Virus record (IMG/VR): IMGVR_UViG_3300024239_000013
Location: 255,335-319,334 of that record
Length of the DNA: 64,000 nt
Strand: one strand, 5' to 3'
Shown here: piece by piece, positions 27,905-62,550 of the stretch
How positions within the stretch are numbered: the first letter of the stretch is position 1
Layout of the letters: each line of letters starts with the position of its first letter
Notes under the pieces: model-generated
The model's database searches: none
What the model saw: only the letters and a program-made list of their open reading frames with translations
What the model was told of the DNA's origin: nothing
Translations under genes and position numbers: made by a program

Positions 27905-27932
27905 TTGTATCTGAATAACAGTAAATAGTTTC
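27905..27932 (-). promoter_or_regulatory. ECF-type promoter GAAAC-N17-ATACAA
   Basis: Exact spacing, 13 nt upstream of ATG 27891. Confidence 0.6.
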
Positions 27933-27937
27933 GCTAG

Positions 27938-28417
27938 TTATCCACCAGTAGTTTCCAAGCCAAGTTCGTTTGAGCTATATACAGTATCTGAATTGTAAGC
28001 AGATCCTGGTATTTCGTTATTTTTATATTTTGAAAGGGTTTCCATGTTACCGTGATCCCCACCTTCTGCAAATTTAACGGTGTCACTTTTAACCTCAATA
28101 ACGCTTTCTGTTTTTTTACCGTCAGTATAAACTTGTATAAAATATCTATATTGCTGATTATCAGGATTTCTAAAAGCTCTAACTATTACACCAATAACCT
28201 TCTTCTTTGAATTCAATGGCTGAGCAGTGATAACATCACCCAATTGAAATTGTGAACCCTTAACAGTTCTATCCACATTAGGATCTGGGCCAACGGAAAC
28301 CGAAAGATCACTGAATGGCTTATAATTTATTTTAAATACACCATTGGCTCCGCCATATCCATAGCTGTCTCCAAATGCATTGCTATCAAATTCATTTATT
28401 GAGATTATGTGTTTCAT
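27938..28417 (-). CDS. Probable internal head protein with SH3/KOW-like domain
   Basis: MKHIISINEF leader; FQLGDVITAQ...IGVIV. Confidence 0.5.
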   Translation of the reverse strand: MKHIISINEFDSNAFGDSYGYGGANGVFKINYKPFSDLSVSVGPDPNVDRTVKGSQFQLGDVITAQPLNSKKKVIGVIVRAFRNPDNQQYRYFIQVYTDGKKTESVIEVKSDTVKFAEGGDHGNMETLSKYKNNEIPGSAYNSDTVYSSNELGLETTGG

Positions 28418-28418
28418 A

Positions 28419-28967
28419 TTAATTAATGTCGGGATTTTCCGAGTTATTTTGAAGCTTTATAACTTCTTTTATCTTAGAAGCTAATTCATATTGTTCATTG
28501 TCAATAGCCTTTTTGAACATAATCTCGAGTTTATTCTCATCGGAATCCTCAAATTTATTATTCTTATATTGAGAATTTTCTATAGTTAGGACCCTTTGTG
28601 GAGAGTAGATGACTTCTAGTGTAGAATCTAGTACAATCTCTTCGAATTCCGCTTCTTCATCATCATATTGTTCCATCAGCTGGTTTAATGATTCTTCGGT
28701 CCATTCTGCATTGTTCCAGAAAATCATCCAATACCCATAAATTAATTCGGAAAGATCATTTTCTATGACGTATTTTAATAGGCATTTTAGCTCATTTTTT
28801 ATATCTGATTTGGTTATACCGGTATCAAAAGATTTTCTCTTAATTCCAGGTATAGCAGAGGTTCCGTCTCCGACACCTTTTTTAAAGCAAGTATTTACCG
28901 CATAAATAGAATCCCAGTCTAGACTAGAAATTACTTTTTCGATTAATTTATTGTTGGGCTTTTTCAT
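28419..28967 (-). CDS. Hypothetical protein with C-terminal UVR (UvrB/UvrC) motif
   Basis: KLEIMFKKAIDNEQYELASKIKEVI. Confidence 0.6.
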   Translation of the reverse strand: MKKPNNKLIEKVISSLDWDSIYAVNTCFKKGVGDGTSAIPGIKRKSFDTGITKSDIKNELKCLLKYVIENDLSELIYGYWMIFWNNAEWTEESLNQLMEQYDDEEAEFEEIVLDSTLEVIYSPQRVLTIENSQYKNNKFEDSDENKLEIMFKKAIDNEQYELASKIKEVIKLQNNSENPDIN

Positions 28968-28972
28968 TTTTT

Positions 28973-28981
28973 TATATATCC
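28973..28981 (-). promoter_or_regulatory. Late-promoter motif GGATATATA
   Basis: 5 nt upstream of ATG 28967, implying a very short leader. Confidence 0.5.
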
Positions 28982-28983
28982 TT

Positions 28984-29397
28984 TTATCTTCCTATTTGCT
29001 CTGCTATATCGGATATCCATTTCTGGTATCTTTCTGGATAGAAACTTTTTAACTGTAAAAGATCTTTTTTTGTAATTTTGTATTTTTCCCTTATTAAATC
29101 TTCAATATCAGGTAATTCTTTTACTGAATCTATCTTCTCCTTTTCTAATTTTTTAGTTTTTGTATATATCCAAGTTGGAGGTTTGCTGTATCTGTGAGAT
29201 AGATTGTCTCTCCACCAATCTACTACCGGAGGGGAGACAACCTTTAATTTATTGAATTGATTAGCCTGTATGGGAAATTGTATCGACATGATTCGATTGA
29301 CCATAAAAAAATTCTTAGACTTATCAAATTTACCTACAGTTTTCCAAACTTTATCGTCACTTGAAAATATATTTTTTATTAAAGTAAATAATTCCAT
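28984..29397 (-). CDS. Probable clamp-loader small subunit (gp62-like)
   Basis: FFMVNRIMSIQFPIQANQFN resembles the gp62 FMINR.LS...AN pattern; same run as the gp44-like gene. Confidence 0.5.
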   Translation of the reverse strand: MELFTLIKNIFSSDDKVWKTVGKFDKSKNFFMVNRIMSIQFPIQANQFNKLKVVSPPVVDWWRDNLSHRYSKPPTWIYTKTKKLEKEKIDSVKELPDIEDLIREKYKITKKDLLQLKSFYPERYQKWISDIAEQIGR

Positions 29398-32022: not shown

Positions 32023-32027
32023 ACTAA

Positions 32028-32055
32028 TTCTAGTGAATAAATTAATTCTTGTTTC
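32028..32055 (-). promoter_or_regulatory. ECF-type promoter GAAAC-N17-CTAGAA
   Basis: Directly upstream of the clamp loader-gmk-RNase H run. Confidence 0.65.
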
Positions 32056-33404: not shown

Positions 33405-33412
33405 CAAATATA
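33405..33412 (-). promoter_or_regulatory. Bacteroidota-type -7 element TATATTTG
   Basis: 17 nt upstream of the ligase ATG. Confidence 0.4.
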
Positions 33413-33436
33413 ATACAAAAATTCGAACTGAAAAAA

Positions 33437-34408
33437 TTATAAATTGAAATATTTACTATTATAGACATCTTCTATCCCGACCGAAACCGCACCTACACTA
33501 GAGCATGCGATAGATCCAGCTATATTACATAATTTTAAAGATTCTTTTATATCCAACCCAGAAGAAAAACATAAAGATATCATAGCGGTAACGGTATCAC
33601 CAGCACCCGAAACGTCGGAAATTTTCACAGGATATGAAGGAGAGTGATATGATTCATTAGCAGTGATGAAAATTACCCCATTTTCTGATAAGGTGACTAG
33701 TATAGATTCTATACCTAATTTAGATATAATATTCCTTCCCTCATAAACTATGGAATCGAAATCATTGGGACTCAATTTTTTATTGATTAAACTACAAAAC
33801 TCTAAGAAATTGGGTTTAATCAAAGTACAACCGCTATATGAATCAAAATTTTTTAATTTAGGGTCTACTAATACTGGCTTATTTTTTTCCTTGCAAATTT
33901 TTATAATTCCCTTTATAAGTACAGAGGTTAATAATCCTTTATTATAGTCCTCCATAATAACACAATCATAAAAATCTATAACGGATTCTATTTTTGATAA
34001 TATAATAGATTCTAAATTACTATCAATATCAATTATATCCTCATTATCAACTCTTAATAATTGATGAGAATTTGAAATGTATCTTGATTTAGTAGTTGTC
34101 TTTATTCCCGACCTTTTTATAAGAAGGCTGAGATCAGATTTTTCTGAAACCAAACTTTCTACCTTATCTCCATTAAGATCATTTCCTATAACAGAAATAA
34201 TATCGCTATATCCACCTAAAGAATGAATGTTTAGAAAAACATTACCTGCCCCTCCTAAATAGTAATTTTCAGATTTATTTAATAATACCGGTACTGGAGC
34301 TTCTGGGGATATTCTAGATACGATTCCATTTACATAATGGTCTAGCATGATATCTCCAATGACCAATATTTTAAGTCTGGAAAAAATATCCCTGATGTCT
34401 AGATTCAT
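33437..34408 (-). CDS. hldE: HldE/RfaE-type D-glycero-D-manno-heptose-7-phosphate kinase (stand-alone kinase domain)
   Basis: VIGDIMLDHY..G.VSRISPEAPVPV, GGAGNV, QLLRVD, DYNKG, VDPK, DVSGAGDTV. Confidence 0.88.
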   Translation of the reverse strand: MNLDIRDIFSRLKILVIGDIMLDHYVNGIVSRISPEAPVPVLLNKSENYYLGGAGNVFLNIHSLGGYSDIISVIGNDLNGDKVESLVSEKSDLSLLIKRSGIKTTTKSRYISNSHQLLRVDNEDIIDIDSNLESIILSKIESVIDFYDCVIMEDYNKGLLTSVLIKGIIKICKEKNKPVLVDPKLKNFDSYSGCTLIKPNFLEFCSLINKKLSPNDFDSIVYEGRNIISKLGIESILVTLSENGVIFITANESYHSPSYPVKISDVSGAGDTVTAMISLCFSSGLDIKESLKLCNIAGSIACSSVGAVSVGIEDVYNSKYFNL

Positions 34409-34440: not shown

Positions 34441-36108
34441 TTATAGTGTCACTTCCGGAGTTTCTTCATCTGTTCCCCCTTCTGCTGGTGTTGTTCCCTC
34501 GGTCGGTGAAACTTCTTCACCAGTAGCGGATTCTGCTCCAGCTTCTCCTGATTCTGCTTCATTTTTTTTAGCAGCTTTAGCTTCCTTTTCTTTATAGATT
34601 TTATTCATTTTTATTTCGTCTGGATTCATTCCAAGAAATCTCTGGATTAAGAAATCATTATCGAAATAAGATTTTTCCTCTTCTCCGACTTTAACTTTAA
34701 GTTCAGCTAATCCCTTAATAAATTCACTTCTTTTTGTAAATGACGTCATCTGTACAGATTCCTCAAATTCATTATCTCTATAAAAATTTAAACCAAGATT
34801 TGATTTAAAGCTTTTATCTTTAGATAATTCAGGATGATCTAAGCACATCTGAATATAAAGAGGTTTTACTAGGATCTCCTGGAATATCGATCTAAGTCTT
34901 CTAAGGAATTTTTCAAATCTTATTTCGTCTCTTTCTAGCTGATCTATAGCTATTTGATAATTGGCAGGTGTTCCATTTTTAGAGGCAAATCTAGCATAAG
35001 GTATTTTAGAATCCATTTTAAGTTTATTGAAGAAAAATAAAACACTCTCCATCACATTAAAATCTGGTCCAGATGGGTTTAACGATTCTATCTGTGGGGA
35101 CTGCCCATCTTTCTCGGGAAACAGATAATTCTTATAGAACTGAACTTTAGGTCTACCGTTAATCGTCAATTCTCCAGAAGCATCATTGATAGAAATATCC
35201 TCTTTATAGTTAGACATCAGTTGTCCCAATGTTTGCATAGCTTTTTGTGAAGATTGACTTCCTATAGGTATAATAAATTTAAGTCTATATGAAGCATTCA
35301 TAACATTCCATATAACTCTGGAGTTTTCCATTATTCTTAGAATATTATAAGATCTCACCAATCTTTCTACGTAACTTACTCTTGAAATACTATTTCCCTT
35401 TGCATAAGAAATATAGATAACCTGTTCGTTAGTGAGTTTTCGGGTCATCTGTGGATTTTTTGGATATTGTAGCCAAAATTGAACATATTCGCTTTCTCCA
35501 ACCTTTTCAACTACAGGTTGCAAAGAAGCAGGATCTAATTCTTTAAATCCTATAATCTCTTTCCCCTTGTTATCATAAATTATTTCAAAAGCTAAAAACC
35601 CATCTATGAGAAACTGTCTAAAATACTGCCACCCCAAAACACTATTCTGAAATCCAAAAACATTATATATTCTATTATAATGTTTGAACATTTTTTCCTT
35701 CATTTTTTCCTTCAGATCCATGTTGATAAATGAGGGTTGTGCAAAATAATTTCTATCGTCGTAATTTATTGCCTCGTCACTAATAGTATCCAATATAAAT
35801 TCTATCTCACCATTCAAAGAAAACTTTCTGAGATAATTTCTCTTATCGTTATAGTCTCTATCGAAATATGCAATATATTTTCTTACCTTTGTATCCTGGT
35901 AAGAAGCTGTCCAATAAAAAGCATCATTTTGGGTAAATCCTGTTCCCTCTTGACTGGAGAAGAATCCCTCAGTTTTCCCAATGGCCTGTGAATTTCTCAC
36001 AACCATATCGTCATACTGCATACCAAATTTTGATATATTCCCTAGATTTTTTAATATATTACCTAGTGCGGATTGGTTTGGTTTTAAATAATCTAAAAAT
36101 CCTGCCAT
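34441..36108 (-). CDS. gp20: Portal protein paralog B (gp20-like)
   Basis: FRQFLIDGFLAFEI, SYVERLVRSYN.LRIME.SRVIW, DEIRFEKFLRRLRSIF. Confidence 0.85.
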   Translation of the reverse strand: MAGFLDYLKPNQSALGNILKNLGNISKFGMQYDDMVVRNSQAIGKTEGFFSSQEGTGFTQNDAFYWTASYQDTKVRKYIAYFDRDYNDKRNYLRKFSLNGEIEFILDTISDEAINYDDRNYFAQPSFINMDLKEKMKEKMFKHYNRIYNVFGFQNSVLGWQYFRQFLIDGFLAFEIIYDNKGKEIIGFKELDPASLQPVVEKVGESEYVQFWLQYPKNPQMTRKLTNEQVIYISYAKGNSISRVSYVERLVRSYNILRIMENSRVIWNVMNASYRLKFIIPIGSQSSQKAMQTLGQLMSNYKEDISINDASGELTINGRPKVQFYKNYLFPEKDGQSPQIESLNPSGPDFNVMESVLFFFNKLKMDSKIPYARFASKNGTPANYQIAIDQLERDEIRFEKFLRRLRSIFQEILVKPLYIQMCLDHPELSKDKSFKSNLGLNFYRDNEFEESVQMTSFTKRSEFIKGLAELKVKVGEEEKSYFDNDFLIQRFLGMNPDEIKMNKIYKEKEAKAAKKNEAESGEAGAESATGEEVSPTEGTTPAEGGTDEETPEVTL

Positions 36109-36112
36109 TTTA

Positions 36113-37702
36113 TTATAATGTTACTTCCGGGGTTTCTTCACCTTCACCCTTATTTTCGGCTTTCTTTTTTTCCCTTTCCTTTCTTTCTAAAGCTTCTTTA
36201 TTTGCAACTATATCTTGTTTAGAAATACCTAAGTAGTTTTCTATAAGAAAAGCATTAGAAAAATACGGTTCTTCATTATCTCCTAAAATTCCACTCATGG
36301 ATAGAATTGCTTCTTTCTTCTTTTCTATTGTTGCTATTTCCTGATTTATTTTAAATGGATTATCAGAGAAATAATCTAAACCTAATTGGCTTTTAAATAA
36401 GAAATCATCTTCAAGATTAGGATATTTCTTAACCATTTGTATCCAAAGTGGTTTTATTAGAATCTCCTGGAAAGTAGATCTTAGTCTAGATATGAATTTT
36501 GAAAATCTTATTTCTTCCTTATCCAGTCCCTCTGCACCATTTGAATAAGGAGACGTACTTCCTCCATCTGGATTATGAAACCTAGAAGGAGGTACTTTAG
36601 ATTCTAATATAAACTTATCGAAAAAATAACTCAAAGGTTGAGGATCGTTTAAATTAGGACCCTCCGTATTTATAGGTTCTATAGTAGGTGTACCATTTAC
36701 ACCAGAAGGCATCAGATAGTTTTTGTAGAATTGTATCTTTGGTCTACCGTCTATTGTCAATTCACCACTTTCATCATTAAGTTCTATATCCTCCTTATAA
36801 ATGCTCATTAGTTCGCCTAGAGTTTGCATTCCTTTTTGCTGGGATTTAGATCCTATCGGAACTGTCATTTTCAGCTTAAATGAAGCGTTCATAACGGACC
36901 AAATAACTCTAGTATATTCCATGATTCGTAGAATATTATAGGGTCTTATAAGTCTCTCTATATAGCTTATTCTTGATATAGCATTACCCTTCGCATAAGA
37001 AATATAAATTATCTGTGGATCATATAAAACTCTTTTTCTTTTAGGATCTTGTGGATATTGTGTCCATGTATTTATAAAAGTCCCATCTATTTGTTTTTCT
37101 ACACTAGGAACTAGGGTTACCGCATCTAATTCTTTAAATCCTATTATATTTTCTCCTCTATCATCATAGATTATCTCAAATGCTAAGAAACCATCTATTA
37201 TAAATTGTCTGAAATATTGCCAGGCTGTTATATCGTCCGAAAATCCCCAGATGTCATATAATTTTTTATATGATTCATAAAGTTCATCCTTTAATTTTTC
37301 ATTTATATCAGTAATATCAATAAAGTCGGGATAAGCAAAGAAATTTGAAGGATCATAGGATATCGACTCGTCACATATAGTATCTAGGACCCATTCAATC
37401 TCAGGATTAAGTGAGAATTTTCTTAAGAAATCTCTTTTCCCTTTATAGTCCTTATCGAAATATCCGATAAACTGTTTAGTAGTTATATCCTGCTTTGCTA
37501 AAGTCCATAACATACTTTCGTCCTCCACGTTGGACTTATTCTTGTTTAAGAAGTTTGCTTCGGTTACACCTACAGCCTGTGAATTTCTGATGACCATGTC
37601 ATCATACTTCATACCAAAGGTACTTATCTTCCTAACAGAGTCTCGGATTCTCTGTATAACAGGAGTCTGTGATGGATTATTATTATCTACAAAGCCAGCC
37701 AT
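36113..37702 (-). CDS. gp20: Portal protein paralog A (gp20-like)
   Basis: FRQFIIDGFLAFEI, SYIERLIRPYN.LRIME, EEIRFSKFISRLRSTF. Confidence 0.85.
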   Translation of the reverse strand: MAGFVDNNNPSQTPVIQRIRDSVRKISTFGMKYDDMVIRNSQAVGVTEANFLNKNKSNVEDESMLWTLAKQDITTKQFIGYFDKDYKGKRDFLRKFSLNPEIEWVLDTICDESISYDPSNFFAYPDFIDITDINEKLKDELYESYKKLYDIWGFSDDITAWQYFRQFIIDGFLAFEIIYDDRGENIIGFKELDAVTLVPSVEKQIDGTFINTWTQYPQDPKRKRVLYDPQIIYISYAKGNAISRISYIERLIRPYNILRIMEYTRVIWSVMNASFKLKMTVPIGSKSQQKGMQTLGELMSIYKEDIELNDESGELTIDGRPKIQFYKNYLMPSGVNGTPTIEPINTEGPNLNDPQPLSYFFDKFILESKVPPSRFHNPDGGSTSPYSNGAEGLDKEEIRFSKFISRLRSTFQEILIKPLWIQMVKKYPNLEDDFLFKSQLGLDYFSDNPFKINQEIATIEKKKEAILSMSGILGDNEEPYFSNAFLIENYLGISKQDIVANKEALERKEREKKKAENKGEGEETPEVTL

Positions 37703-37735
37703 TTAAATAATACTTTATTAATTTTATCGAATTTC

Positions 37736-38338
37736 TTAAATTAATTTCGATCTATATTCATTATATATCCCCTGTATGGATAACCCCTCTATCATATTAA
37801 AACTAAGATAAGGAATTTTTGGCCAATCCTCCATGGAAATAACCTTAACATTTTTTATGAATTTATATTTAAATCCAAAATAGGAATTTAAATATCCAGT
37901 ACCTTTAAGAATATTCTTTAGCACAGGGTCCTTTAAATTCACTGGAACTTTGGTCGATCCTCTTTCGTATGAATTCTTATTAGCTAATAATTGTTCATAG
38001 AAATTATCATATATTCTTTCTATTATATCAACTCTTATTATATTCGGTACAGTTATTAAATCTATACCTTTTATTACAGTTCCAGATTCTAATGTGTTGA
38101 AAACATCGGTACAAATAACAAGAGGCATTCGATCTACGAAAGGCCTTTTTTTGCTAATTTCAGAATCCGTTAAATACCTAAAAGAGTAAATCTCTCCTGG
38201 GATGAATGGAGGAATGAAAGATATATCTGGTGAATCGTTCTTAAAATATTTACTTAAGAACAGATCATTAGTTGAAGTGAATATGTTTCCCGAACTAGTT
38301 TCATCTTCTTTGTATTTAAGAACTAAATCTTTATACAT
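37736..38338 (-). CDS. gp2: DNA end protector (gp2-like)
   Basis: PGEIYSFRY...PFVDRMPLVI...GIDL; adjacent to gp4. Confidence 0.7.
   Translation of the reverse strand: MYKDLVLKYKEDETSSGNIFTSTNDLFLSKYFKNDSPDISFIPPFIPGEIYSFRYLTDSEISKKRPFVDRMPLVICTDVFNTLESGTVIKGIDLITVPNIIRVDIIERIYDNFYEQLLANKNSYERGSTKVPVNLKDPVLKNILKGTGYLNSYFGFKYKFIKNVKVISMEDWPKIPYLSFNMIEGLSIQGIYNEYRSKLI
37762..37770 (-). promoter_or_regulatory. Late-promoter motif GGATATATA embedded in the 3' end of gp2
   Basis: About 60 nt upstream of the portal A start. Confidence 0.5.
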
Positions 38339-38829: not shown

Positions 38830-39189
38830 TTAAATATTATATGAATTATCATCACCAGTGATATAGCTAAATGGTATAGTTTTAGGATTTTTAGGGGGAT
38901 GTAATTTTTTCCATCCCTTAGCAAATCCATTTTTAGCAATCTGTGTAAAATAAGCAAATGGATTATTAGACTTTTCAGGATTGAATCGATTCCAATATTT
39001 ACAGAGATCTTCCATAGCAAAGGCCATACAATCTTCTTTATCTTCTGGATCTTTATATGACATTTTCTTAGCTATACCGTTTATCATTAAGGTAAACATT
39101 TCTATAGTTTCCGGTGTCAGCTTACCGGCTTTCTTTGATTCTATTACAGCAAGCATAAGCTCACTATTTTTAACATATTCTTTTGCCAT
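38830..39189 (-). CDS. gp55: Late-transcription sigma factor (gp55-like); start reassigned to ATG 39189 (MAKEYV)
   Basis: YVKNSEL, KYWNRFNPEKSNNPFAYFTQI. Confidence 0.85.
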   Translation of the reverse strand: MAKEYVKNSELMLAVIESKKAGKLTPETIEMFTLMINGIAKKMSYKDPEDKEDCMAFAMEDLCKYWNRFNPEKSNNPFAYFTQIAKNGFAKGWKKLHPPKNPKTIPFSYITGDDNSYNI

Positions 39190-39216: not shown

Positions 39217-39244
39217 TTCTAGTATAAAAAATGGTAAATATTTC
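39217..39244 (-). promoter_or_regulatory. ECF-type promoter GAAAT-N17-CTAGAA upstream of gp55
   Basis: Same spacing and -10 as the other copies. Confidence 0.6.
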
Positions 39245-39246: not shown

Positions 39247-39283
39247 AAAAAAAGAATGTAGCTTTTTGGTTACATTCTTTTTT
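39247..39283 (-). terminator. Intrinsic terminator
   Basis: aaaaaagaatgta-N10-tacattctttttt 13-bp stem. Confidence 0.75.
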
Positions 39284-39441: not shown

Positions 39442-41829
39442 TTAGTTTTTTTTTAAAGTTTCAGATTCGGTTAAATTCCCATCATTTTCAACTTTACCCT
39501 CTCTAAGATTATATCCAATTTCATATTTTTCCCCATCTGCATCTTCTGCATCAAAATTAGTTTTATCTTTGGTTTTAGGTGAATCAGCTAAAAGTTTTTC
39601 TCCTTCCACTTTACCCTTTTCTTTTTTATTGTTTCCTGGGGCTTTTGCAAGATCGTCATTACCATCTTTCTTCTTAGCTTCGTTCATAGTAATATTATAC
39701 CCATGAAGAGAATCTAATTCCATTTCTATGGAATCTTGTTCTCCCTTAGGAGCTTTAGAAAAACTGTGGCTATCTGCAAAATTCTTTAAAAGAGTTTTTT
39801 GCTCTTCTATGCTTAGGTCTGATTTATTAAGATTATTTGACTCTTTAACTTCTTCTGCTTCCTCCTCCTCTTTAGCATCTTTTTCATTTTTATCTGCAGC
39901 TTGACTTAAAGCTTCTTCCAAATCAGAAATTTCATTAACTAGGAAATCTTCGGTTTTTCCGTTGTCTAAAAGTATAGTATATCTTCCAGATGTCCCATCT
40001 ACTGAAATTATCTTACCGGTTTCTCCTGATTCTTTAACTTTTATAAAATCTCCAATATTGAATTTTTCATCTTCTGATATATTAATTTTGTCAGCAAATG
40101 AAATTTCTTCTTCTATTTTAGATATTTCAGTGTTTATTTGGTTCCATTTTTCTCTTAGAACATTTAGTTCGTTTTCTAATGCAGATTTAGCAGTTAGAAT
40201 TTCATTAGAGCTTTTATATAAAGGTGAAGATTCTAATAAAGAATTTATTTTATTAATCTCATTCTCAACTTTAGAAATATTTTCTAAAACTTTATTTCTA
40301 TCATTTACCATGATAGATTTTAGTTTATTTTCGCCTTCCAAGAACTCAGTTAACCCTTCCGAAATATCATATTTTAAATAAGACTTAACCATAGAAACTG
40401 CTTGAGTTCCACTAACTTTGAAAATTGAATTTTCATTCATAGTTTGGTTAATCTTTTGTAAATAGATCTGATTATTCCACTTGAACATATTTACACCAAC
40501 TCCTTCATAGATATTAGAATTTATACTTTTTGCAAAATCTAACTCAACTATATCTGAATAGTTATTGTATAAGAACATTGTATCATTAACAACTTCTGAT
40601 TCATTTACTCCAAAATAAGAGCTAGACTCTAATCCTAATATTTTAGCAAGTCCAATATTATCTGAAAATCTTAATTTATCTTTTCCTAAATAAACTGCTA
40701 CATTTTCTCCCTCTTCTACTAGTTTAACTATTTTTTTACCAAATCTAATGGAAATACCATTCTCATTAATAGTAACATGTGGTTTTTTAGTAATCTCCAC
40801 TAATTTAAGATAATCTGAAGGTAATTCAGAAACCTGTTTTTCTGTTAATTTAACTAATTCTTTTTCTGATGCTTCGAATACAGAATTTCCTATATGGAAG
40901 AAAGTTCTTCCATTTTCAAATAAAATAGGCGAGTAAACTCTAGAAACGCTAGATTCACCCTGAGCTTTTATTGGAATTTCCAAGAATCTATTATCCTCTT
41001 TCTCGTTTATATTTAGAAAATTTATTAAATTTCTAACAACTGGATTGAAACTATATTTAGAAATATCTCTAACTAATAAACCATTTGACTTTTCTTCTGA
41101 AACCAACCAAGAATTTAAAGTTTCAGAAAGTTCAGAATAGAATGCATAGCTTCCACTATTTTTGATAGATTCTAAAACTTTAGAAACCTCAATTTCTCTA
41201 GAATATTTTTTAGCTTTATTCTTTAACTCTTCTGCTATACCTCTAACTGAATTTTCCCAATTAAAAGATTCTAATTCAGCAATAAAATTATTCACTACAA
41301 CAAACTCAGGAAGATTCTTATTTAAAATAAGATTCTGATATTGTTCAAAAAGTACTTTTGCTTTAGGATACTCACAGATAGAAGATTCTTTCAACTTGGA
41401 AATTGCCTCCATAACTCCCAAGTTTTTAATTCCTTGAGATTCAATAAATGAAATAGCAGATCCGTCTTTATCTTCTAAACTAGATATACTCTCTAATAGT
41501 TTTTCAGATTTGGCATCGTCCATTTCATTACCAGGAAGATATGATCCTGAATTTGATGATGTGTTTTTACCTAATCCTGACCAAGATTCCATAAGTGCTT
41601 CTGCTGCTCTTTTAGATACCTCAGCTTCTTCCTTTCTTATTGCTTCAATGTGATTGACAATACTAGGAGATTCGTTTTGTGTCATTTCTGAATTATTATG
41701 TTCGTTGATAGAAGCTATTAATTGATCTTTAGAAACGGATTCGCCTCTAAGAAAACTCTCACATAGTGATTTTACCTCTGGAGATTTTGTTACCTCTTTT
41801 AATTTTTTTACTTGGTTTATAAAGTCCAT
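39442..41829 (-). CDS. Large probable head/core protein with KOW-like domain and xKAP repeats
   Basis: 795 aa; FNIGDFIKVKESGETGKII; many (L/I)xE sites; late promoter upstream. Confidence 0.6.
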   Translation of the reverse strand: MDFINQVKKLKEVTKSPEVKSLCESFLRGESVSKDQLIASINEHNNSEMTQNESPSIVNHIEAIRKEEAEVSKRAAEALMESWSGLGKNTSSNSGSYLPGNEMDDAKSEKLLESISSLEDKDGSAISFIESQGIKNLGVMEAISKLKESSICEYPKAKVLFEQYQNLILNKNLPEFVVVNNFIAELESFNWENSVRGIAEELKNKAKKYSREIEVSKVLESIKNSGSYAFYSELSETLNSWLVSEEKSNGLLVRDISKYSFNPVVRNLINFLNINEKEDNRFLEIPIKAQGESSVSRVYSPILFENGRTFFHIGNSVFEASEKELVKLTEKQVSELPSDYLKLVEITKKPHVTINENGISIRFGKKIVKLVEEGENVAVYLGKDKLRFSDNIGLAKILGLESSSYFGVNESEVVNDTMFLYNNYSDIVELDFAKSINSNIYEGVGVNMFKWNNQIYLQKINQTMNENSIFKVSGTQAVSMVKSYLKYDISEGLTEFLEGENKLKSIMVNDRNKVLENISKVENEINKINSLLESSPLYKSSNEILTAKSALENELNVLREKWNQINTEISKIEEEISFADKINISEDEKFNIGDFIKVKESGETGKIISVDGTSGRYTILLDNGKTEDFLVNEISDLEEALSQAADKNEKDAKEEEEAEEVKESNNLNKSDLSIEEQKTLLKNFADSHSFSKAPKGEQDSIEMELDSLHGYNITMNEAKKKDGNDDLAKAPGNNKKEKGKVEGEKLLADSPKTKDKTNFDAEDADGEKYEIGYNLREGKVENDGNLTESETLKKN

Positions 41830-41851
41830 TTTTTACTTTTTTTTTACTGTT

Positions 41852-41862
41852 TATATATCCAA
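41852..41862 (-). promoter_or_regulatory. Late promoter TTGGATATATA
   Basis: Exact 11-mer upstream of ATG 41829. Confidence 0.7.
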
Positions 41863-41913
41863 CTAAGGACAAGAAACTTTTACTATATATTTTACGATAT
41901 AATCTTTTTTTTC

Positions 41914-42408
41914 TTAATGACATACTAATATTTCCAATTTAACTGTTATATCAGTACTTGGATTATAAAATGATATTCCACCATCACCAATATTACCGGA
42001 AACTGTTCCAGGTTTAGATAGATTCCATCCAAGATATTCTGAATTTATAGTAGAAACTTTAGGTCCGGAAAGCACCATCAATTCACCCATATTATTAATA
42101 TTTCCCTGATATGTCCAATTTATGTATTTTCTAGATTCTACGACCGTGCTCGGGTATACTGCTTTTACTGCTATGAATGAAACATATCCATTTTCATCTG
42201 CAATATCACTTTGACTCAATAGAGATCTACTACCAGGTCTTAAAGTTACTCTAGATCTAGAAAATTTATTCACGGGTATACTCAAATCACTCAAAGAAAG
42301 GTATTTTATGGGATTCATAGAATTGCCATCATCTAATACTAAGTCTTCTTTATAAAATCTAAGTCCTTCTGTTACGTCATAAGGACAATTGATAGGTTGT
42401 GTTGCCAT
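41914..42408 (-). CDS. Hypothetical beta-rich protein, paralog of 42410..43084
   Basis: Shared NG.VS.I..KA.Y, MGE.M.LSG and GG..F.NP motifs. Confidence 0.6.
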   Translation of the reverse strand: MATQPINCPYDVTEGLRFYKEDLVLDDGNSMNPIKYLSLSDLSIPVNKFSRSRVTLRPGSRSLLSQSDIADENGYVSFIAVKAVYPSTVVESRKYINWTYQGNINNMGELMVLSGPKVSTINSEYLGWNLSKPGTVSGNIGDGGISFYNPSTDITVKLEILVCH

Positions 42409-42409
42409 T

Positions 42410-43084: not shown

Positions 43085-43101
43085 TTTTACTTGTGATATT
43101 T

Positions 43102-43806: not shown

Positions 43807-43820
43807 TATTATCGATTCTG

Positions 43821-44123
43821 TTATTTTTTAAGACTTTCAAGTTTTTTTATTTCTAAATCAATTTCACTCTGTCTGTTCACGTCTAATATTTTTCTATCCG
43901 TAGATTGAATCATTCTTTTTTCAACTTTAAGACCTTCTATTTCGATCATATTTTTTAATTCCTGTTTATTCGCTACAGAATCAAGAATAGCTGATTGTAT
44001 TTTAGATTGTTTAGCTAATTTTTCAATATCACTATTAGCTCCACACTGTTTAACGAAAAGAACAGCTAAAAACACAAGTACAATAACTTCAAAATTAGAT
44101 TTGATTTTCTCGATTATTTTCAT
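43821..44123 (-). CDS. Membrane-anchored coiled-coil protein (spanin candidate); start reassigned to ATG 44123
   Basis: MKIIEKIK..FEVIVLVFLAVLFVKQC then coiled coil; longer ORF-track start crosses a terminator. Confidence 0.45.
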   Translation of the reverse strand: MKIIEKIKSNFEVIVLVFLAVLFVKQCGANSDIEKLAKQSKIQSAILDSVANKQELKNMIEIEGLKVEKRMIQSTDRKILDVNRQSEIDLEIKKLESLKK

Positions 44124-44143
44124 AATATTAATTTTTATTTTTT

Positions 44144-44154
44144 TATATATCCAA
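44144..44154 (-). promoter_or_regulatory. Late promoter TTGGATATATA
   Basis: Exact 11-mer 20 nt upstream of ATG 44123. Confidence 0.7.
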
Positions 44155-44167
44155 AAACAAACTCCAC

Positions 44168-44796: not shown

Positions 44797-44824
44797 TTCT
44801 AGTTATTTTTATTTGTTTTGTTTC
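44797..44824 (-). promoter_or_regulatory. ECF-type promoter GAAAC-N17-CTAGAA
   Basis: Exact copy upstream of ATG 44778. Confidence 0.65.
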
Positions 44825-46099: not shown

Positions 46100-46127
46100 T
46101 TATATCATCGTAAATCTTTATTGTTTC
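46100..46127 (-). promoter_or_regulatory. ECF-type promoter GAAAC-N17-ATATAA
   Basis: 13 nt upstream of ATG 46086. Confidence 0.6.
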
Positions 46128-46726
46128 TCGTCTATTTTTTTTCTGATTTTACTGCGAGCTCTTCTGATCCTTGTAGCGATGGATCTTTTCTTTATCCCAT
46201 ATTTTTCTGCAATGTCCTTATATTTCATATTGTTTATCTCTCGGTCGATCATAATGTCTCTGTATAACTCTGGGAGATCTCTAATCTCATCCAGAACGGA
46301 TTCATAAAACTCATCAAAAGTAGATTCCTCCTTATAGAATGCATACAAAGGATCCTCTTCTAAAACATACTGTCCTCCTATCTCATTGGATTCGTTTTTT
46401 GAAGAAAGATATTCGAGTTCAGCATCAGTGTGATTGTGATATCTTTTTCTGGACTTCATTAAGAGGAGAGATTCATTTCTTGCTATATTATAACACCAAG
46501 TTGAAAAATTTCCTCTTTCATTGTTATACTGGTCTATTTTTATCCAAATTTTAGACATGGTATTAATGAAAGCATCTTCAGCAAGTTCCTGTTCTTTTAC
46601 AATCAAAAAACAATGGTTTAGTATACCAGGTCGGAGTCTCTCGAATAAAATTTTAAAATTCTTATCATTTTTCACAGTTATGAAATCCTCAGCTATCTTT
46701 TGGATATTCTTTTCTTTTTGTTGCAT
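46118..46726 (-). CDS. ECF-family (sigma-24-like) RNA polymerase sigma factor
   Basis: Region 2 AEDAF...NFSTWCYNIARN; region 4 LPELYR...MKYKDIAE..GI...IATRIRRAR. Confidence 0.9.
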   Translation of the reverse strand: MQQKEKNIQKIAEDFITVKNDKNFKILFERLRPGILNHCFLIVKEQELAEDAFINTMSKIWIKIDQYNNERGNFSTWCYNIARNESLLLMKSRKRYHNHTDAELEYLSSKNESNEIGGQYVLEEDPLYAFYKEESTFDEFYESVLDEIRDLPELYRDIMIDREINNMKYKDIAEKYGIKKRSIATRIRRARSKIRKKIDEKQ

Positions 46727-46729
46727 ATA

Positions 46730-47335: not shown

Positions 47336-47355
47336 ACAACTACATTTGATTGGTG

Positions 47356-47363
47356 CAAATGTA
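47356..47363 (-). promoter_or_regulatory. Bacteroidota-type -7 element TACATTTG(C)
   Basis: 20 nt upstream of the dCMP deaminase-ECF sigma pair. Confidence 0.45.
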
Positions 47364-47403
47364 GATCAAAATCTCGCTATAAAAAAATATTTTGTATTAT
47401 TTT

Positions 47404-60014: not shown

Positions 60015-60033
60015 TATAGCTAGATACTTTGGT

Positions 60034-60042
60034 TATATATCC
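60034..60042 (-). promoter_or_regulatory. Late-promoter motif GGATATATA
   Basis: 19 nt upstream of the neck-terS-terL run. Confidence 0.6.
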
Positions 60043-60053
60043 GCTTAAAAAAG

Positions 60054-61256
60054 TTAGAATGAATTTTGAGTGTAATTAGAATTTACCCAATCGATTATGG
60101 AAAGATATACATCTTCAGGTTTTATTGTTTTTGTACATTCAAAAGCTCTTTCGGTTCCTTTATGCAAAGGACACCACCACCAATCACCCCTATCAAATTT
60201 ATATTTGGGGTCAGTAAAGCAACCATGACAAACGTTTTTATTTATAATCCTTAAGCATTTGTCGGAAAATTCTAAAAAAGGATCTGTAAATCCAGATATC
60301 ATAACAGTTGGAATTCCTAGTCCCCAAGATAACCAAGAAAGACCTGAACTTAATCCTATAAAGAAATCACAATTCAAAAGGTCACTTATTCTATCCTCAA
60401 GAGGGAAATCCCCACTCTTATCGACTACTCCTTTTAATTTGGTTTCTCCTTTTTGTATAACCACAACTTCATAACCAGAAAATTTCAGAAGATCTACTAG
60501 TCTTTGCCATCCGCCAGGATAGTGCCAAAATTTTGAACCTGCGGTAGATTCGGTAGCTATACAAACATATTTTTTATCAAAAATTTTATTTTTCTCTCTC
60601 CTATTGATTTTAGGTCTAATTTCTCCAATATAATCAACCCCCAGTATATCACTACATACTTTTTGTAGAGGAATGCTTCTGGGATCGTTTATATGAACGT
60701 TTCTATCATCCTCTTCATACCATCCTATACCGATAACAACTTTCGTTCCTGGTTCTCTGTGGCCTGGAGGTTTAAATTTAATTTCGGGATACATCGAATC
60801 GAAAAGTTCATTATAGAAAGTAGTAACAGTTAGATCCATAACTCCATATTTTTTTCTAAATTCCTCAATATAAGGAACCCATGCTATAGTATCACCTAGA
60901 GATGAACTATCTATAGAGATACAAACCTTGCCGGTTTTTAGGTAATCGTAAAGATGAAATTCAGAGATTAATATTTTATCAGAATTATAGACTTCTATTA
61001 TGCAATTATAGATTCCCCTTTTAAATGCACTGGAGAACATATTATGAGATAGCTTAGCACCATATAATTCTTTGTTACCATCTCTTATAATGACGAAAAA
61101 ATAATCATCCGGATTTTCAGATCTTCCTGAAATATAAACTCTGGGATAATAATCAAACCAACAATGAACGTCAGTTTTTAGATTGTCACTTACAAAAATA
61201 TTTTCTGACTTTTCTATATCAGAATAAATTGAAATTGAATTTTTACTTATTTCCAT
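60054..61256 (-). CDS. TibC/Aah-type (autotransporter) protein O-heptosyltransferase
   Basis: SSSLGDTIAW.PY.EEF, KYVCIA, K.W..P.GW..LV, FIGLSSGLSWL, MISGFT, VCHGCF...FDRGDWWWCP.HKGT...FECTKTI. Confidence 0.82.
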   Translation of the reverse strand: MEISKNSISIYSDIEKSENIFVSDNLKTDVHCWFDYYPRVYISGRSENPDDYFFVIIRDGNKELYGAKLSHNMFSSAFKRGIYNCIIEVYNSDKILISEFHLYDYLKTGKVCISIDSSSLGDTIAWVPYIEEFRKKYGVMDLTVTTFYNELFDSMYPEIKFKPPGHREPGTKVVIGIGWYEEDDRNVHINDPRSIPLQKVCSDILGVDYIGEIRPKINRREKNKIFDKKYVCIATESTAGSKFWHYPGGWQRLVDLLKFSGYEVVVIQKGETKLKGVVDKSGDFPLEDRISDLLNCDFFIGLSSGLSWLSWGLGIPTVMISGFTDPFLEFSDKCLRIINKNVCHGCFTDPKYKFDRGDWWWCPLHKGTERAFECTKTIKPEDVYLSIIDWVNSNYTQNSF

Positions 61257-62215
61257 TACACGTTTAATAATTTTAAAATTAAAGAAACGTTAAATGCTTT
61301 ATCCGAACTTAAATAGTGAACATTTTTCATATTGTCATACATATCCAAATAAGTCGGTAGTTTCTTTATAACAGTAGGCAAATTCCAAGAAAGAGATTCC
61401 TTTATTGAAAGAGGATTTAATTCAAAATTTGATGTAAATAAAAATAAATCTGATGCTTGATAGAACAAATCGACATCGGATCTTTCTCCCCATATATGAC
61501 AATTAGAAGGCACATCAGAGACCAAAGGTTCCCAATAATCTCTAAAATTATCTGCAAGATTACCAACAAAATGGAATATGATCTGGGTCTCTAAATTCAT
61601 ATTTAAAATTTCTCTAGCATACTCAAAAATCTCAGATTGATTTTTTCCAGGTGTAAAAAGACCAACGTTTACGATATGTTTATATTTTGGATTAAAACCT
61701 AAAAATTCCATACATTTTGATTTTTCAGCCTTTAATTCCTCTATCGGATATTCGAGAATAATTGAAGGTATTCCTAGCACTTTGAATTTTTCATCGTTCC
61801 ACTTAGAAACCATTACAAAAAGATCAGGTTTGTAAATTTTACTAGAAACCTCAGTTACCGAACTATGACAACTTTCTACTATTTTATATTTTCTATCTTT
61901 AGAAAATATTTTTAGAAGAATCTCATCAGGAACAAAGCTTTCACAAAACTCTTCAAAATGAATTACGTCTGGGTTTATTTTTTCTATAGTCTCATAAAGT
62001 AAAGCCCCGTCACTAAAAATGGGGATAAATCTATCCCCTAATAATTCTTTTATTCTGTTCCTTTGTACTACATATGCATCTCCAAGATAATCATATTCCA
62101 CACAATATACTTCTCCGACATCATTAAAGACTTCTATTTTTTTCCAAAGATATTGTGGTAATCCACCAGTAGAAAGATGTGGGGATATGTATAATATTTT
62201 TAATTTATCCTGCAT
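61256..62215 (-). CDS. GT4-family glycosyltransferase
   Basis: SPHLSTGGLPQY, NVGLFTPGKNQ, WGERSDVD.FYQASDLF, ELNPLSIKE. Confidence 0.85.
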   Translation of the reverse strand: MQDKLKILYISPHLSTGGLPQYLWKKIEVFNDVGEVYCVEYDYLGDAYVVQRNRIKELLGDRFIPIFSDGALLYETIEKINPDVIHFEEFCESFVPDEILLKIFSKDRKYKIVESCHSSVTEVSSKIYKPDLFVMVSKWNDEKFKVLGIPSIILEYPIEELKAEKSKCMEFLGFNPKYKHIVNVGLFTPGKNQSEIFEYAREILNMNLETQIIFHFVGNLADNFRDYWEPLVSDVPSNCHIWGERSDVDLFYQASDLFLFTSNFELNPLSIKESLSWNLPTVIKKLPTYLDMYDNMKNVHYLSSDKAFNVSLILKLLNV

Positions 62216-62232
62216 ATTTAGATTTAAAGAAA

Positions 62233-62505
62233 TTATCCCTTTGTATATACGCCAGTAGCAAAATCTAATTTACCCTCACCATATTGATTTACTACCTTTA
62301 CTTGTAAATCCTCCTCCATTTTAGAAATAGCCTCTGCTTTTGAATAAAGTGATTCTAATTCAGCATTAATCATTTCCAGATCCTTTTCATAAAATCTTTT
62401 TTGTACATTTAATCTACCTATCGCAATGACATTTTCGGTTAATTCGTTTTTTACGTCTTGAATTTCGGATAACAATTCATTAGGCAATTGAATACTTTCG
62501 CTCAT
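62233..62505 (-). CDS. Small coiled-coil protein
   Basis: 90 aa ending YGEGKLDFATGVY. Confidence 0.6.
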   Translation of the reverse strand: MSESIQLPNELLSEIQDVKNELTENVIAIGRLNVQKRFYEKDLEMINAELESLYSKAEAISKMEEDLQVKVVNQYGEGKLDFATGVYTKG

Positions 62506-62522
62506 ATTTTTAATTTTTTATA

Positions 62523-62550
62523 TTCTATAACATGAAAATGAAATAGTTTC
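62523..62550 (-). promoter_or_regulatory. ECF-type promoter GAAAC-N17-ATAGAA
   Basis: Heads the 90-aa, GT4, heptosyltransferase run. Confidence 0.6.

What the first reader, a model, noticed from the sequence alone, without database searches (positions are those of the whole stretch)
27905..62550. Bipartite GAAAC-N17-MTANAA promoter and a probable three-tier sigma cascade
Seen: exact GAAAC-N17-(A/C)TA(G/C/T)AA at 27905, 32028, 44797, 46100 and 62523; GAAAT version at 39217; weaker copies at 12209 and 6872. All are just upstream of genes; a rough estimate is about 0.5 chance copies per strand in the window. Known: ECF sigmas read an AAC-containing -35 element. Inference: a host-type promoter drives dCMP deaminase plus the ECF sigma; the ECF sigma drives replication, glycosylation genes and gp55; gp55 drives virion genes. 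This would be a sigma-only replacement for the T4 MotA/AsiA middle mode.
Basis: partly seen in the sequence, partly recalled or inferred. Interest (0 to 1): 0.72.

Follow-up and report, generated by a model that had tools for sequence, protein, structure and literature searches.

The report
Conserved phage middle promoters, sigma relay
A 319-kb T4-like phage, probably of Bacteroidota, has a conserved two-box promoter-like motif (GAAAC/T, 16-17 nt, nTAnAA) before its replication genes and its late-sigma gene gp55; the phage's own ECF-type sigma most likely reads it, giving a host sigma to ECF sigma to gp55 relay in place of T4's MotA/AsiA step.

Summary
All five exact GAAAC-N17-MTANAA copies and the GAAAT copy are on the minus (coding) strand, 6-28 nt before start codons. 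That is 5 found against 0.88 expected.

The motif is not a window fluke:
- The two boxes and the 16-17 nt spacing are kept in about 120 distinct orthologous upstream regions of IMG/VR relatives, while the spacer sequence is free.
- The same spacing peak appears, on the coding strand only, in five further related genomes and in the cultured phage PAU.

De novo analysis also found two other promoter classes. One is a Bacteroidota sigma-A type (T-run, then TAnnTTTG) before the dCMP deaminase-ECF sigma operon. The other is a late GATATATA box before virion genes.

Genes behind the GAAAC class are the clamp loader, gp32, nucleotide enzymes, nucleases, glycosyltransferases and gp55. AsiA and MotA were not detected.

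- For: close relatives that lack the phage's third sigma (RpoS/RpoD-like, outside the window) keep the motif.
- Against: PAU has the motif without an ECF sigma.

No transcription start data could be obtained. Verdict: a new variant of a known kind (a phage sigma relay), and a well-supported promoter class.

The parts
47356..47387 (-). Early, host-type promoter (T-run, about 18 nt, then TACATTTG, a Bacteroidota -7 box TAnnTTTG) before the dCMP deaminase-ECF sigma operon
   Evidence: The class was found de novo by dyad analysis. It was located and is conserved in relatives. The consensus TTTG/TAnnTTTG is from PMC6847099.
46730..47335 (-). dCMP deaminase
   Evidence: PF00383 at 7.8e-25 and phrog_174 at 2.7e-52.
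46118..46726 (-). ECF-type (group 4) sigma factor, 202 aa, the proposed reader of the middle promoters
   Evidence: It has Sigma70_r2 and r4_2 and no r3. TIGR02937 scores 69.6 bits against a cut-off of 42.9, and the best subfamily is Sig70_bacteroi1. There are 198 IMG/VR relatives. The DNA-binding regions are invariant.
46100..46127 (-). Middle promoter-like site GAAAC-N17-ATATAA before the 147-aa membrane protein and the exonuclease. The GAAAC overlaps the last sigma codons and the stop.
   Evidence: The motif is kept in 47 of 51 distinct orthologous regions even where the sigma C-terminus differs.
44797..44824 (-). Middle promoter-like site GAAAC-N17-CTAGAA before the 185-aa gene 44221-44778
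   Evidence: It is kept in 39 of 40 distinct orthologous regions. The MAFFT alignment shows conserved AGAAAC and CTAAAA blocks with an unconserved spacer.
39217..39244 (-). Middle promoter-like site GAAAT-N17-CTAGAA before gp55
   Evidence: It is kept in 27 of 31 distinct orthologous regions, and is present as GAAAC/TAAAC-N16/17-[AG]TATAA in two distant relatives, L151 and L147.
39248..39283 (-). Intrinsic-terminator-like hairpin with a T-run, directly before the gp55 promoter
   Evidence: The hairpin is conserved in relatives.
38830..39189 (-). gp55-type late sigma (119 aa)
   Evidence: phrog_234 'late sigma transcription factor' at 2.8e-14. Sigma70_r2 only. It is 83-93% identical in relatives.
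37722..37748 (-). GAAAT-N16-GATAAAA site between the late box and the portal A start. It is a conserved second promoter-like element.
32028..32055 (-). Middle promoter-like site before the clamp loader, guanylate kinase and exonuclease. The -10 box ends 5 nt before the ATG, so the mRNA is probably leaderless.
   Evidence: It is conserved in relatives at 79-87% identity, and as [GT]AAAC-N16/17-nTATAA in relatives down to about 34% identity.
27905..27932 (-). Middle promoter-like site before the UvdE-like endonuclease 26989-27891
   Evidence: It is conserved, with some GGAAC variants, in 15 relatives.
62523..62550 (-). Middle promoter-like site before the 90-aa gene and two glycosyltransferases (61256-62215, 60054-61256)
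   Evidence: It is conserved only in the one close relative that has this module.
63001..63028 (-). Candidate GAAAT-N17-ATATAA site before 62567-62986. Not verified.
   Evidence: No conservation test was done.
60034..60041 (-). Late box GATATATA before the 829-aa head-closure-like gene. This is one of 11 exact copies of the box within 60 nt of minus-strand starts in the window. The others begin at 54861, 41852, 37762, 28973, 26199, 25437, 22752, 17131, 10180 and 8360.
   Evidence: The box occurs 40 times in upstream regions against 1.7 expected. Sites are listed. Downstream genes are the tail sheath, prohead protease, portal and head closure. The same box is enriched in G002, G003, G005, G009 and G011.
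33405..33436 (-). Early-type promoter before the DNA ligase. A second one lies at 26958-26988 before the 3'-5' exonuclease.

Best explanation
The motif G(A/G)AA(C/T), 16-17 nt, (C/A/G)TA(N)AA is the middle promoter class of this phage. A -35-like box and a -10-like box are held at a fixed distance and lie 5-30 nt before start codons. The proposed programme has three steps:
1. The host primary sigma reads T-run/TAnnTTTG early promoters. These drive, among others, the dCMP deaminase-ECF sigma operon.
2. The phage ECF-type sigma (46118-46726) joins the host core polymerase and reads the GAAAC class. This turns on replication and nucleotide-metabolism genes, glycosyltransferases and the gp55 gene.
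3. gp55 then reads the -10-only late box GATATATA before virion genes.

Shown: the motif, its conservation, its spacing constraint, the gene classes, the sigma inventory, and that AsiA and MotA were not detected.
Inferred: that the boxes are promoters, which factor reads them, and the temporal order.
For: Statistics: 5 copies against 0.88 expected in the window. There is a coding-strand spacer peak at N16/17 in six genomes: G000 23 against 10.4, G011 26 against 8.7, G009 30 against 9.8, G002 35 against 9.2, G003 23 against 3.3, and PAU 23 at N16 against about 2 per other spacer. In G005 only the nTATAA form is clearly in excess (6 against 0.7). None shows a peak on the other strand.

Footprint: the boxes are kept in 39/40, 47/51, 27/31 and 5/5 distinct orthologous upstream regions, while the spacer sequence varies. 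About 6% of G000 upstream regions match by chance. GAAAC persists across differing sigma C-termini.

Gene classes: middle sites precede the clamp loader, gp32, thymidylate synthase, dTMP kinase, RNA ligase, nucleases and gp55. Late boxes precede the sheath, protease and portal.

Reader:
- G011 (99% complete, ECF 85% identical) and G002 (91% complete) have only the ECF sigma and gp55, and both keep the motif. In these genomes three strong motif classes match three available specificity factors.
- The geometry matches ECF promoters. SigW reads tGAAACnTTTt at -35 and CGTA at -10, and ECF spacers run 14-17 bp (PMC5758882).
- The middle -10 box lacks the near-invariant TTTG of the host sigma-A box (PMC6847099).
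- The optimal spacing and the -10 flavour vary with phage lineage (N17 in G002, N16 in G003 and PAU).
- None of 121 genomes of the phylum of a MAG that holds a relative's contig showed the pattern clearly above its reversed control.
- The ECF gene is behind an early-type promoter in both close and distant relatives.
Against: - No transcription start or expression data exist. The only runs that hold the phage are wastewater libraries kept as contigs, and these are probably DNA.
- The -10 box (nTAnAA, often TATAA-like) lacks the CGT typical of ECF promoters and resembles a group 1-3 sigma -10.
- Phage PAU has the same motif but no ECF sigma. Its only two-domain sigma, gp1, resembles the RpoS-like sigma in region 2. 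So either different sigmas read the same motif in different phages, or a shared factor does.
- G000 has a second early sigma (RpoS-like) with no assigned promoter class.
- The ECF gene is not preceded by its own motif, and no anti-sigma partner was supported.
- Some -10 boxes lie only 5 nt from the ATG, which requires leaderless mRNA.
Confidence: 0.6

Rival explanations
1. The motif is a genuine promoter class, but it is read by a host factor: a Bacteroidota alternative sigma, or host sigma-A redirected by an unidentified phage activator in the manner of MotA. The phage ECF sigma does something else.
For: The same GAAAC-N16/17-nTATAA motif occurs in phages with different sigma repertoires. The G000 clade has an ECF sigma, while PAU has only gp1. 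One shared host reader would be the more economical explanation. PAU has no TAnnTTTG class at all, so something present at entry must read its GAAAC class.
Against: - It would leave the conserved phage ECF sigma without any enriched promoter class.
- The middle -10 box lacks the TTTG that host sigma-A needs.
- The pattern is not enriched in 121 genomes of the putative host phylum.
- Spacing and -10 details vary by phage lineage.
- PAU gp1 is annotated in its record as a virion protein, so it could be delivered with the DNA.
Confidence: 0.2
2. The motif is read by the phage's RpoS/RpoD-like sigma (genome 6573-7490, outside the window), not by the ECF sigma.
For: The -10 box resembles TATAAT, and CTGAAA-N18-TATAAT in PAU is close to a canonical sigma-70 promoter. 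PAU gp1 region 2 is 35% identical to this sigma. The gene is behind an early-type promoter.
Against: The sigma is absent from G011 (99% complete), G002 (91%), G003 and G005. These keep the motif, and G011 keeps the same orthologous sites.
Confidence: 0.07
3. The conserved two-box element is not a promoter. It is another cis signal, for example an operator for a DNA-binding regulator, an RNA-level signal in 5' leaders, or part of terminator-promoter cassettes.
For: No start-site data exist. Several sites lie very close to the ATG. In PAU the GAAAC box often sits inside a hairpin. At portal A the element lies downstream of a late box, so it would be within the late transcript.
Against: A fixed 16-17 nt gap with a free spacer sequence, strict orientation with the downstream gene, placement just after terminators or stop codons, and -35/-10-like content together form the classic signature of a sigma-dependent promoter.
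Confidence: 0.08

Closest known systems
Bacillus phage SPO1 sigma cascade (host sigma-A, then gp28, then gp33/34)
   Same: Early genes are read by the host primary sigma. A phage sigma made early redirects the host core to middle genes, and one of those genes encodes the late specificity factor (abstract of PMC13401047; details from my own knowledge).
   Different: Here the middle sigma is ECF-type and the late factor is T4 gp55-type. The host is probably Bacteroidota, with non-canonical sigma-A promoters. Nothing has been tested experimentally.
Phage T4 programme: early, then MotA/AsiA middle, then gp55/gp33/gp45 late
   Same: The core genes are T4-like: clamp loader, gp32, portal, sheath and gp55. 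There are three promoter classes. The late class is a -10-only A/T box, and gp55 is made before the late genes (abstract of PMC6024815).
   Different: No AsiA or MotA was found. The middle class has its own -35 and -10 boxes rather than a MotA box combined with a host -10. The late box is GATATATA rather than TATAAATA. A gp45-type clamp domain was not detected by Pfam, and gp33 was not examined.
ECF sigma promoters of the SigW type (tGAAACnTTTt at -35, CGTA at -10)
   Same: GAAAC at -35 is often followed by T-rich bases. The spacing falls within the ECF range of 14-17 bp. TA sits where SigW has the TA of CGTA (PMC5758882; the N16 spacing of SigW is from my own memory).
   Different: The -10 box has no CG. 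It is A/T-only (CTAGAA, ATATAA, CATATAA). There is no autoregulation of the sigma gene and no supported anti-sigma.
RpoE-type sigma genes in the T4-superfamily rhizobiophages PhiM9 and P10VF
   Same: A T4-superfamily phage carries a complete ECF-family sigma gene, noted as unusual (PMC4621102).
   Different: There the sigma was proposed to replace gp55/gp33 in late transcription, and no promoter class was defined. Here it coexists with gp55 and has a conserved candidate regulon.
Group 2 jumbo phages with phage-encoded sigma factors (Iyer et al. 2021)
   Same: T4-core jumbo phages, including the Lak and Tenacibaculum phages, encode a minimal sigma and fuller sigmas and are presumed to recruit the host polymerase (PMC7824862).
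   Different: That work is a gene inventory only. It describes no promoter motifs, regulons or ordering.
Coliphage phiEco32 gp36 (ECF-like sigma for middle and late genes)
   Same: A phage ECF-like sigma redirects the host core polymerase (from my own knowledge; not checked here).
   Different: It is a podovirus. As I recall, its promoters have a single -10-region element, and it has no gp55 tier.

Membership tests
ECF (group 4) sigma-70 family, for gene 46118-46726 | Sigma region 2 and region 4 domains are present | tested here: met
   PF04542 at 2.2e-9 and PF08281 at 7e-11, both above their cut-offs.
ECF (group 4) sigma-70 family, for gene 46118-46726 | No region 3 or region 1.1, and a size of about 200 aa | tested here: met
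   The protein is 202 aa with no r3 or r1 hit. TIGR02937 sigma70-ECF scores 69.6 bits against a cut-off of 42.9.
ECF (group 4) sigma-70 family, for gene 46118-46726 | A cognate anti-sigma is encoded next to it. This is usual, not universal. | tested here: inconclusive
   The conserved downstream 147-aa membrane protein has no Pfam hit. The complex prediction gave no verdict.
ECF (group 4) sigma-70 family, for gene 46118-46726 | The sigma gene is autoregulated from its own promoter type. This is usual, not universal. | tested here: not met
   The gene lies 3 nt behind the dCMP deaminase gene and under an early-type promoter. The weak GAAAT site before it is not conserved.
ECF (group 4) sigma-70 family, for gene 46118-46726 | Binds core polymerase and directs promoter-specific initiation | not testable with these tools
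   This needs in vitro transcription or a reporter assay.
ECF-type promoter, for the GAAAC class | A -35 box containing AAC | tested here: met
   G(A/G)AA(C/T) is near-invariant in about 120 orthologous sites.
ECF-type promoter, for the GAAAC class | A constrained short spacer (14-17 bp) | tested here: met
   Spacer peaks occur at 16-17 only.
ECF-type promoter, for the GAAAC class | A -10 box with CGT | tested here: not met
   The -10 box is (C/A/G)TA(N)AA and is A/T-rich.
ECF-type promoter, for the GAAAC class | Transcripts start just downstream | not testable with these tools
   The only runs found are contigs, probably of DNA.
T4-type late transcription | A gp55 homologue | tested here: met
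   phrog_234 at 2.8e-14, with region 2 only.
T4-type late transcription | A -10-only A/T octamer before virion genes | tested here: met
   GATATATA occurs 40 times against 1.7 expected, has no conserved -35 box, and lies before the sheath, protease and portal.
T4-type late transcription | gp33 co-activator and gp45 sliding clamp | tested here: inconclusive
   The gp45 C-domain PF09116 was not found. gp33 was not searched for. Divergent homologues cannot be excluded.
T4 MotA/AsiA middle mode | AsiA anti-sigma and MotA activator | tested here: not met
   PF09010 and PF09158 gave no match at E up to 1 in a genome that CheckV rates 100% complete.
Bacteroidota sigma-A promoter, for the early class | A -7 box TAnnTTTG | tested here: met
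   TACATTTG/TATATTTG boxes with an upstream T-run have dyad P down to 1e-28. The consensus is from PMC6847099.
Bacteroidota sigma-A promoter, for the early class | A -33 box TTTG | tested here: inconclusive
   The upstream element is a T-run or TTATC rather than a clear TTTG. The cited paper also finds the -33 box weak.

The most novel reading that the evidence does not exclude
A whole, mostly uncultivated clade of T4-core jumbo phages of Bacteroidota shares one ancient phage-specific promoter grammar, GAAAC, 16-17 nt, nTA(T)AA. The clade includes hundreds of IMG/VR genomes, wastewater-abundant strains and the cultured phage PAU. The grammar would be read by phage-encoded two-domain sigmas.
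- In most members an early-expressed ECF-type sigma makes it the middle tier that switches on replication genes and gp55.
- PAU has no host-type promoters. There a sigma annotated as a virion protein (gp1) may be delivered with the DNA, making the same grammar the entry tier. Such a phage would never need the host's primary sigma.
Probability: 0.35. Interest if true: 0.78.

Novelty: new variant of a known kind. Interest (0 to 1): 0.62.

Why it matters
How T4-like phages that lack MotA/AsiA time their middle genes is an open question for most of the T4 superfamily. Here a concrete answer can be tested: a defined promoter class, a named candidate sigma, and a wiring diagram in which host sigma leads to the ECF sigma, then gp55.

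All of these are conserved across hundreds of environmental genomes, and the same motif is present in one cultured phage (PAU, on a Sphingobacterium-type host). That gives a bench system.

The finding also yields three promoter classes for annotating operons and temporal classes in Bacteroidota jumbo phages. If confirmed, it would provide an orthogonal sigma/promoter pair for a phylum whose transcription signals differ from the E. coli paradigm.

Tried and rejected
- Megablast of 8 kb against 50,697 phage records found no match. The nearest named phages by protein are the Prevotella Lak phages and PAU, at 36-40% identity in the clamp loader.
- RNA evidence: the runs that hold the phage are wastewater 'RNA-Seq' libraries kept as contigs, probably DNA. 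There are no read starts, so nothing can be said about start sites.
- ECF sigma with the downstream 147-aa membrane protein as a possible anti-sigma: the complex job gave no verdict. It counts neither for nor against.
- Lak-B5, 100 kb around its sigma and clamp loader: no GAAAC peak, only a faint AAAC/TAAAC-N16/17-nTATAA rise at 25% GC. Inconclusive.
- GAAAC alone is not enriched in upstream regions (30 against 27 expected). Only the spaced pair is.
- The TTGTTAATAACTT box of G002 and G005 looked like a variant -35 box. It proved to be a far-upstream element of their early promoters.
- A scan of bacterial genome contigs with the sigma alignment found only two phage contigs inside MAGs, one labelled Saprospirales. 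No cellular homologue was found, so no autoregulated bacterial promoter could be compared.
- PAU gp1 against the ECF alignment aligns only at the region 4 helix, at low probability.

Full report
**Setting.** The window is the last 64 kb of a single 319,334-bp IMG/VR virus record that CheckV rates 100% complete. The genome is 31% G+C. My mechanical gene call gave 440 ORFs, 384 of them on the minus strand. Every feature discussed here is on the minus strand.

**Observation.**
All five are on the minus strand. The expected number is 0.88, and none of 100 shuffles reached five.
- The GAAAT copy is at 39217-39244, directly after a terminator-like hairpin (39248-39283) and 27 nt before the real gp55 start at 39189.
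- Each copy ends 6-28 nt before a start codon.
- The copies at 12209 and 6872 do not hold up.

**Independent statistical test.** The pattern had been fitted to the hits, so I varied the spacer.
- On the coding strand of the whole genome, GAAAC..[AC]TA.AA gives 13 copies at N17 against 3-8 at other spacers. GAAAT gives 22 against 3-17. The opposite strand is flat.
- GAAAC alone is not enriched upstream of genes. The signal lies in the spaced pair.

**Other promoter classes, found de novo.** K-mer and dyad analysis of 283 oriented upstream regions gave two much stronger classes.
- GATATATA(A/G) occurs 40 times against 1.7 expected. It lies 17-30 nt before starts and has no conserved upstream box.
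- A T-run or TTATC element is followed about 14-20 nt later by TA(c/t)(a/t)TTTG, with dyad P down to 1e-28. This second class matches the Bacteroidota primary-sigma promoter TTTG/TAnnTTTG (PMC6847099).
- Canonical TTGACA/TATAAT-like sites are under-represented (29 against 43.8).
- In the window, the early type lies before the dCMP deaminase-sigma operon (47356-47387), the ligase and a 3'-5' exonuclease.
- The late box lies before the tail sheath, the prohead protease, both portal paralogues' operon, head-closure genes and several unknown large proteins.

**Genes.**
- 46118-46726 is a 202-aa sigma with regions 2 and 4 only. It passes the ECF superfamily model, and its best subfamily is a Bacteroidetes ECF group.
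- 46730-47335 is a dCMP deaminase.
- 38830-39189 is a gp55-type late sigma.
- Genes behind GAAAC-class sites in the window:
  - the clamp loader, guanylate kinase and an exonuclease;
  - a UvdE-like endonuclease;
  - a 147-aa membrane protein and a PD-(D/E)XK-type exonuclease;
  - a 185-aa protein;
  - a 90-aa protein and two glycosyltransferases;
  - gp55.
- Elsewhere in the genome, sites conserved with a relative precede a gp32-type SSB, thymidylate synthase, a phosphoesterase-like protein, a cytidylyltransferase-domain protein and a baseplate-hub-like protein. Sites that were not conserved or not tested precede thymidylate kinase and RNA ligase.
- The class is therefore mainly replication and nucleotide metabolism, as expected of middle genes.

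**Comparative evidence.**
- The sigma has 198 relatives in IMG/VR, at 64-86% identity among the best 80, in conserved synteny.
- In distinct orthologous upstream regions, the pattern G[AG]AA[CT]-N16/17-NTANAA is present in 39/40 (185-aa gene), 47/51 (147-aa gene), 27/31 (gp55) and 5/5 (UvdE). The spacer has no conserved sequence. About 6% of G000 upstream regions match by chance.
- An unbiased MAFFT alignment shows only the AGAAAC and CTAAAA blocks as conserved.
- The GAAAC at 46123-46127 overlaps the last sigma codons. It persists in relatives whose sigma C-termini differ in length and sequence, so selection acts on the DNA.
- Before the clamp loader, the motif is kept in relatives at 79-87% identity. 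It recurs as [GT]AAAC-N16/17-nTATAA in relatives down to about 34% identity.
- The -10 box ends a constant 5 nt before that ATG, which suggests a leaderless mRNA (inference).
- The glycosyltransferase site is conserved only in the single close relative that has that module.

**Replication in whole genomes.** I fetched five related genomes and ran the same spacer test.

| Genome | N16+N17 on coding strand | Expected | P |
|---|---|---|---|
| G011 | 26 | 8.7 | 1.5e-6 |
| G009 | 30 | 9.8 | 1.6e-7 |
| G002 | 35 | 9.2 | 7.5e-11 |
| G003 | 23 | 3.3 | 1.7e-12 |
| G005 (nTATAA form) | 6 | 0.7 | 7e-5 |

- None of these genomes shows a peak on the other strand.
- G002 and G003 share only 30-35% sigma identity with the window phage. 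Their sites read GAAAC(A/T)-N15/16-(C/A)ATATAA, 6-30 nt before genes.
- GATATATA is enriched upstream of genes in all of them.

**Who reads the motif?** The genome has three sigma-like genes: the ECF sigma, gp55, and a 305-aa RpoS/RpoD-like sigma at 6573-7490, outside the window. The RpoS-like sigma also sits behind early-type promoters in G000, G009 and G010.
- The RpoS-like sigma is absent from G011 (99% complete, the closest large relative), G002 (91% complete), G003 and G005. All of these keep the motif, and G011 keeps the same orthologous sites. That essentially excludes it as the obligatory reader.
- In those genomes, three strongly enriched motif classes face three available specificity factors:
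  - The host sigma-A fits TAnnTTTG.
  - gp55 fits a -10-only A/T octamer, as in T4.
  - The ECF sigma is left for the two-box class.
- The geometry fits ECF promoters. SigW reads tGAAACnTTTt and CGTA, with spacers of 14-17 bp (PMC5758882). Many sites here read GAAAC(n)TTT.
- The middle -10 box lacks the TTTG that is nearly invariant in host promoters.
- The pattern is not enriched in 121 genomes of the phylum of a MAG that carries a relative's contig.
- The ECF gene itself is early-type in close relatives and in G002.
- AsiA and MotA are not detectable.

**Evidence that cuts the other way.**
- Phage PAU is cultured, and its host has been reclassified to Bacteroidetes (PMC4621102). It shows the strongest peak of all: GAAAC-N16-GTATAA(T), 23 copies against about 2 per other spacer.
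- PAU has no ECF-type sigma. It has only gp55 and gp1, a divergent protein with regions 2 and 4. Region 2 of gp1 is closer to the RpoS-like sigma. Its record also calls gp1 a capsid-internal protein.
- PAU lacks TAnnTTTG-type promoters altogether.
- So the same grammar is apparently served by a different sigma there, or by a shared host factor. This is the main reason I keep the ECF assignment at about 0.6.
- The -10 box is also more TATAAT-like than CGT-like.

**No direct expression data.** The runs found are wastewater libraries stored as contigs, probably DNA. They show only that strains 98-99% identical are abundant there.

**Comparison with the known.**
- Phage sigma relays are established (SPO1). 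So is the T4 three-class programme, and ECF-like or RpoE-like sigma genes have been noted in phages.
- In five of the six literature searches run, which covered phage ECF sigmas, jumbo-phage sigmas, Bacteroidetes promoters and PAU, I found no description of this promoter class, its regulon or this wiring. The sixth search retrieved the SigW promoter consensus.
- I rate it a new variant of a known kind. It has a T4-core late system (gp55) coupled to an ECF-type middle sigma, with its own conserved bipartite promoter, in phages of a phylum with non-canonical transcription signals.

Noticed in passing
window 34441-36108 and 36113-37702 (minus strand): There are two tandem portal-protein paralogues, both phrog_213 (E 1.9e-62 and 7.2e-52). 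This is unusual for a tailed phage.
   Followed up: no
G000 genome 6573-7490 (plus strand; outside the window): A third phage sigma, RpoS/RpoD-like, 305 aa, with regions 1.2, 2, 3 (weak) and 4. It sits behind early-type promoters in G000, G009 and G010. It is absent from G011, G002, G003 and G005. No promoter class can be assigned to it.
   Followed up: partly
window 32023-32033 and orthologous loci L087-L102: The -10 box of the clamp-loader site ends a constant 5 nt (6 in one relative) before the ATG, which suggests a leaderless clamp-loader mRNA.
   Followed up: partly
window 37722-37769: Portal A has a late GATATATA box. It is followed by a conserved TCGAAATTAATTTAA...nTAnAA element, so the gene has tandem late and middle-type signals. 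The arrangement is conserved in relatives with at least 75% protein identity.
   Followed up: partly
window 47340-47364 (minus strand): The -7 box TACATTTG of the early promoter before the dCMP deaminase forms the 5' arm of a 9-bp stem-loop that would lie at the start of the transcript.
   Followed up: no
G000 genome 91.7-100.7 kb (outside the window): Seven hairpins of the form AAAACTTCCCACT-loop-AAGTGG lie 8-12 nt before the starts of small ORFs. They are absent from G009, G011 and G002. Their function is unknown.
   Followed up: partly
window 45643-46086 (minus strand): A conserved 147-aa protein with a C-terminal membrane segment lies directly after the ECF sigma and has its own GAAAC-class site. 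An anti-sigma role was considered but could not be supported.
   Followed up: partly
NC_019521.1 (phage PAU), L254-L264 and L279: PAU has about 23 GAAAC-N16-GTATAA(T) sites, many with the GAAAC inside a hairpin (CCCTCGGAAACTGAAACTTTCGAGGG). It also has a TTATACATAT class of about 40 sites and no TAnnTTTG class. Its sigma-like gp1 is annotated as a capsid-internal protein.
   Followed up: partly
G002 and G005 (L184-L198, L208-L215): The early promoters of these relatives carry an extra, highly conserved TTGTTAATAACTT box about 40-50 nt upstream of the TTATATTTG box, often with a hairpin between the two.
   Followed up: partly
window 41800-47500, L280 and L281: Strains 98-99% identical to the window phage are abundant in several wastewater sequencing runs. 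A relative's 70-kb contig is binned in a MAG labelled Saprospirales, which is a weak hint at the host.
   Followed up: no
window 33437-34408, 60054-62215; genome 201181-203157: A PfkB-family sugar kinase, two glycosyltransferases and a cytidylyltransferase-domain protein are present. They suggest a sugar-activation and glycosylation pathway, with either DNA or virion as the target. Part of it lies behind GAAAC-class sites.
   Followed up: no
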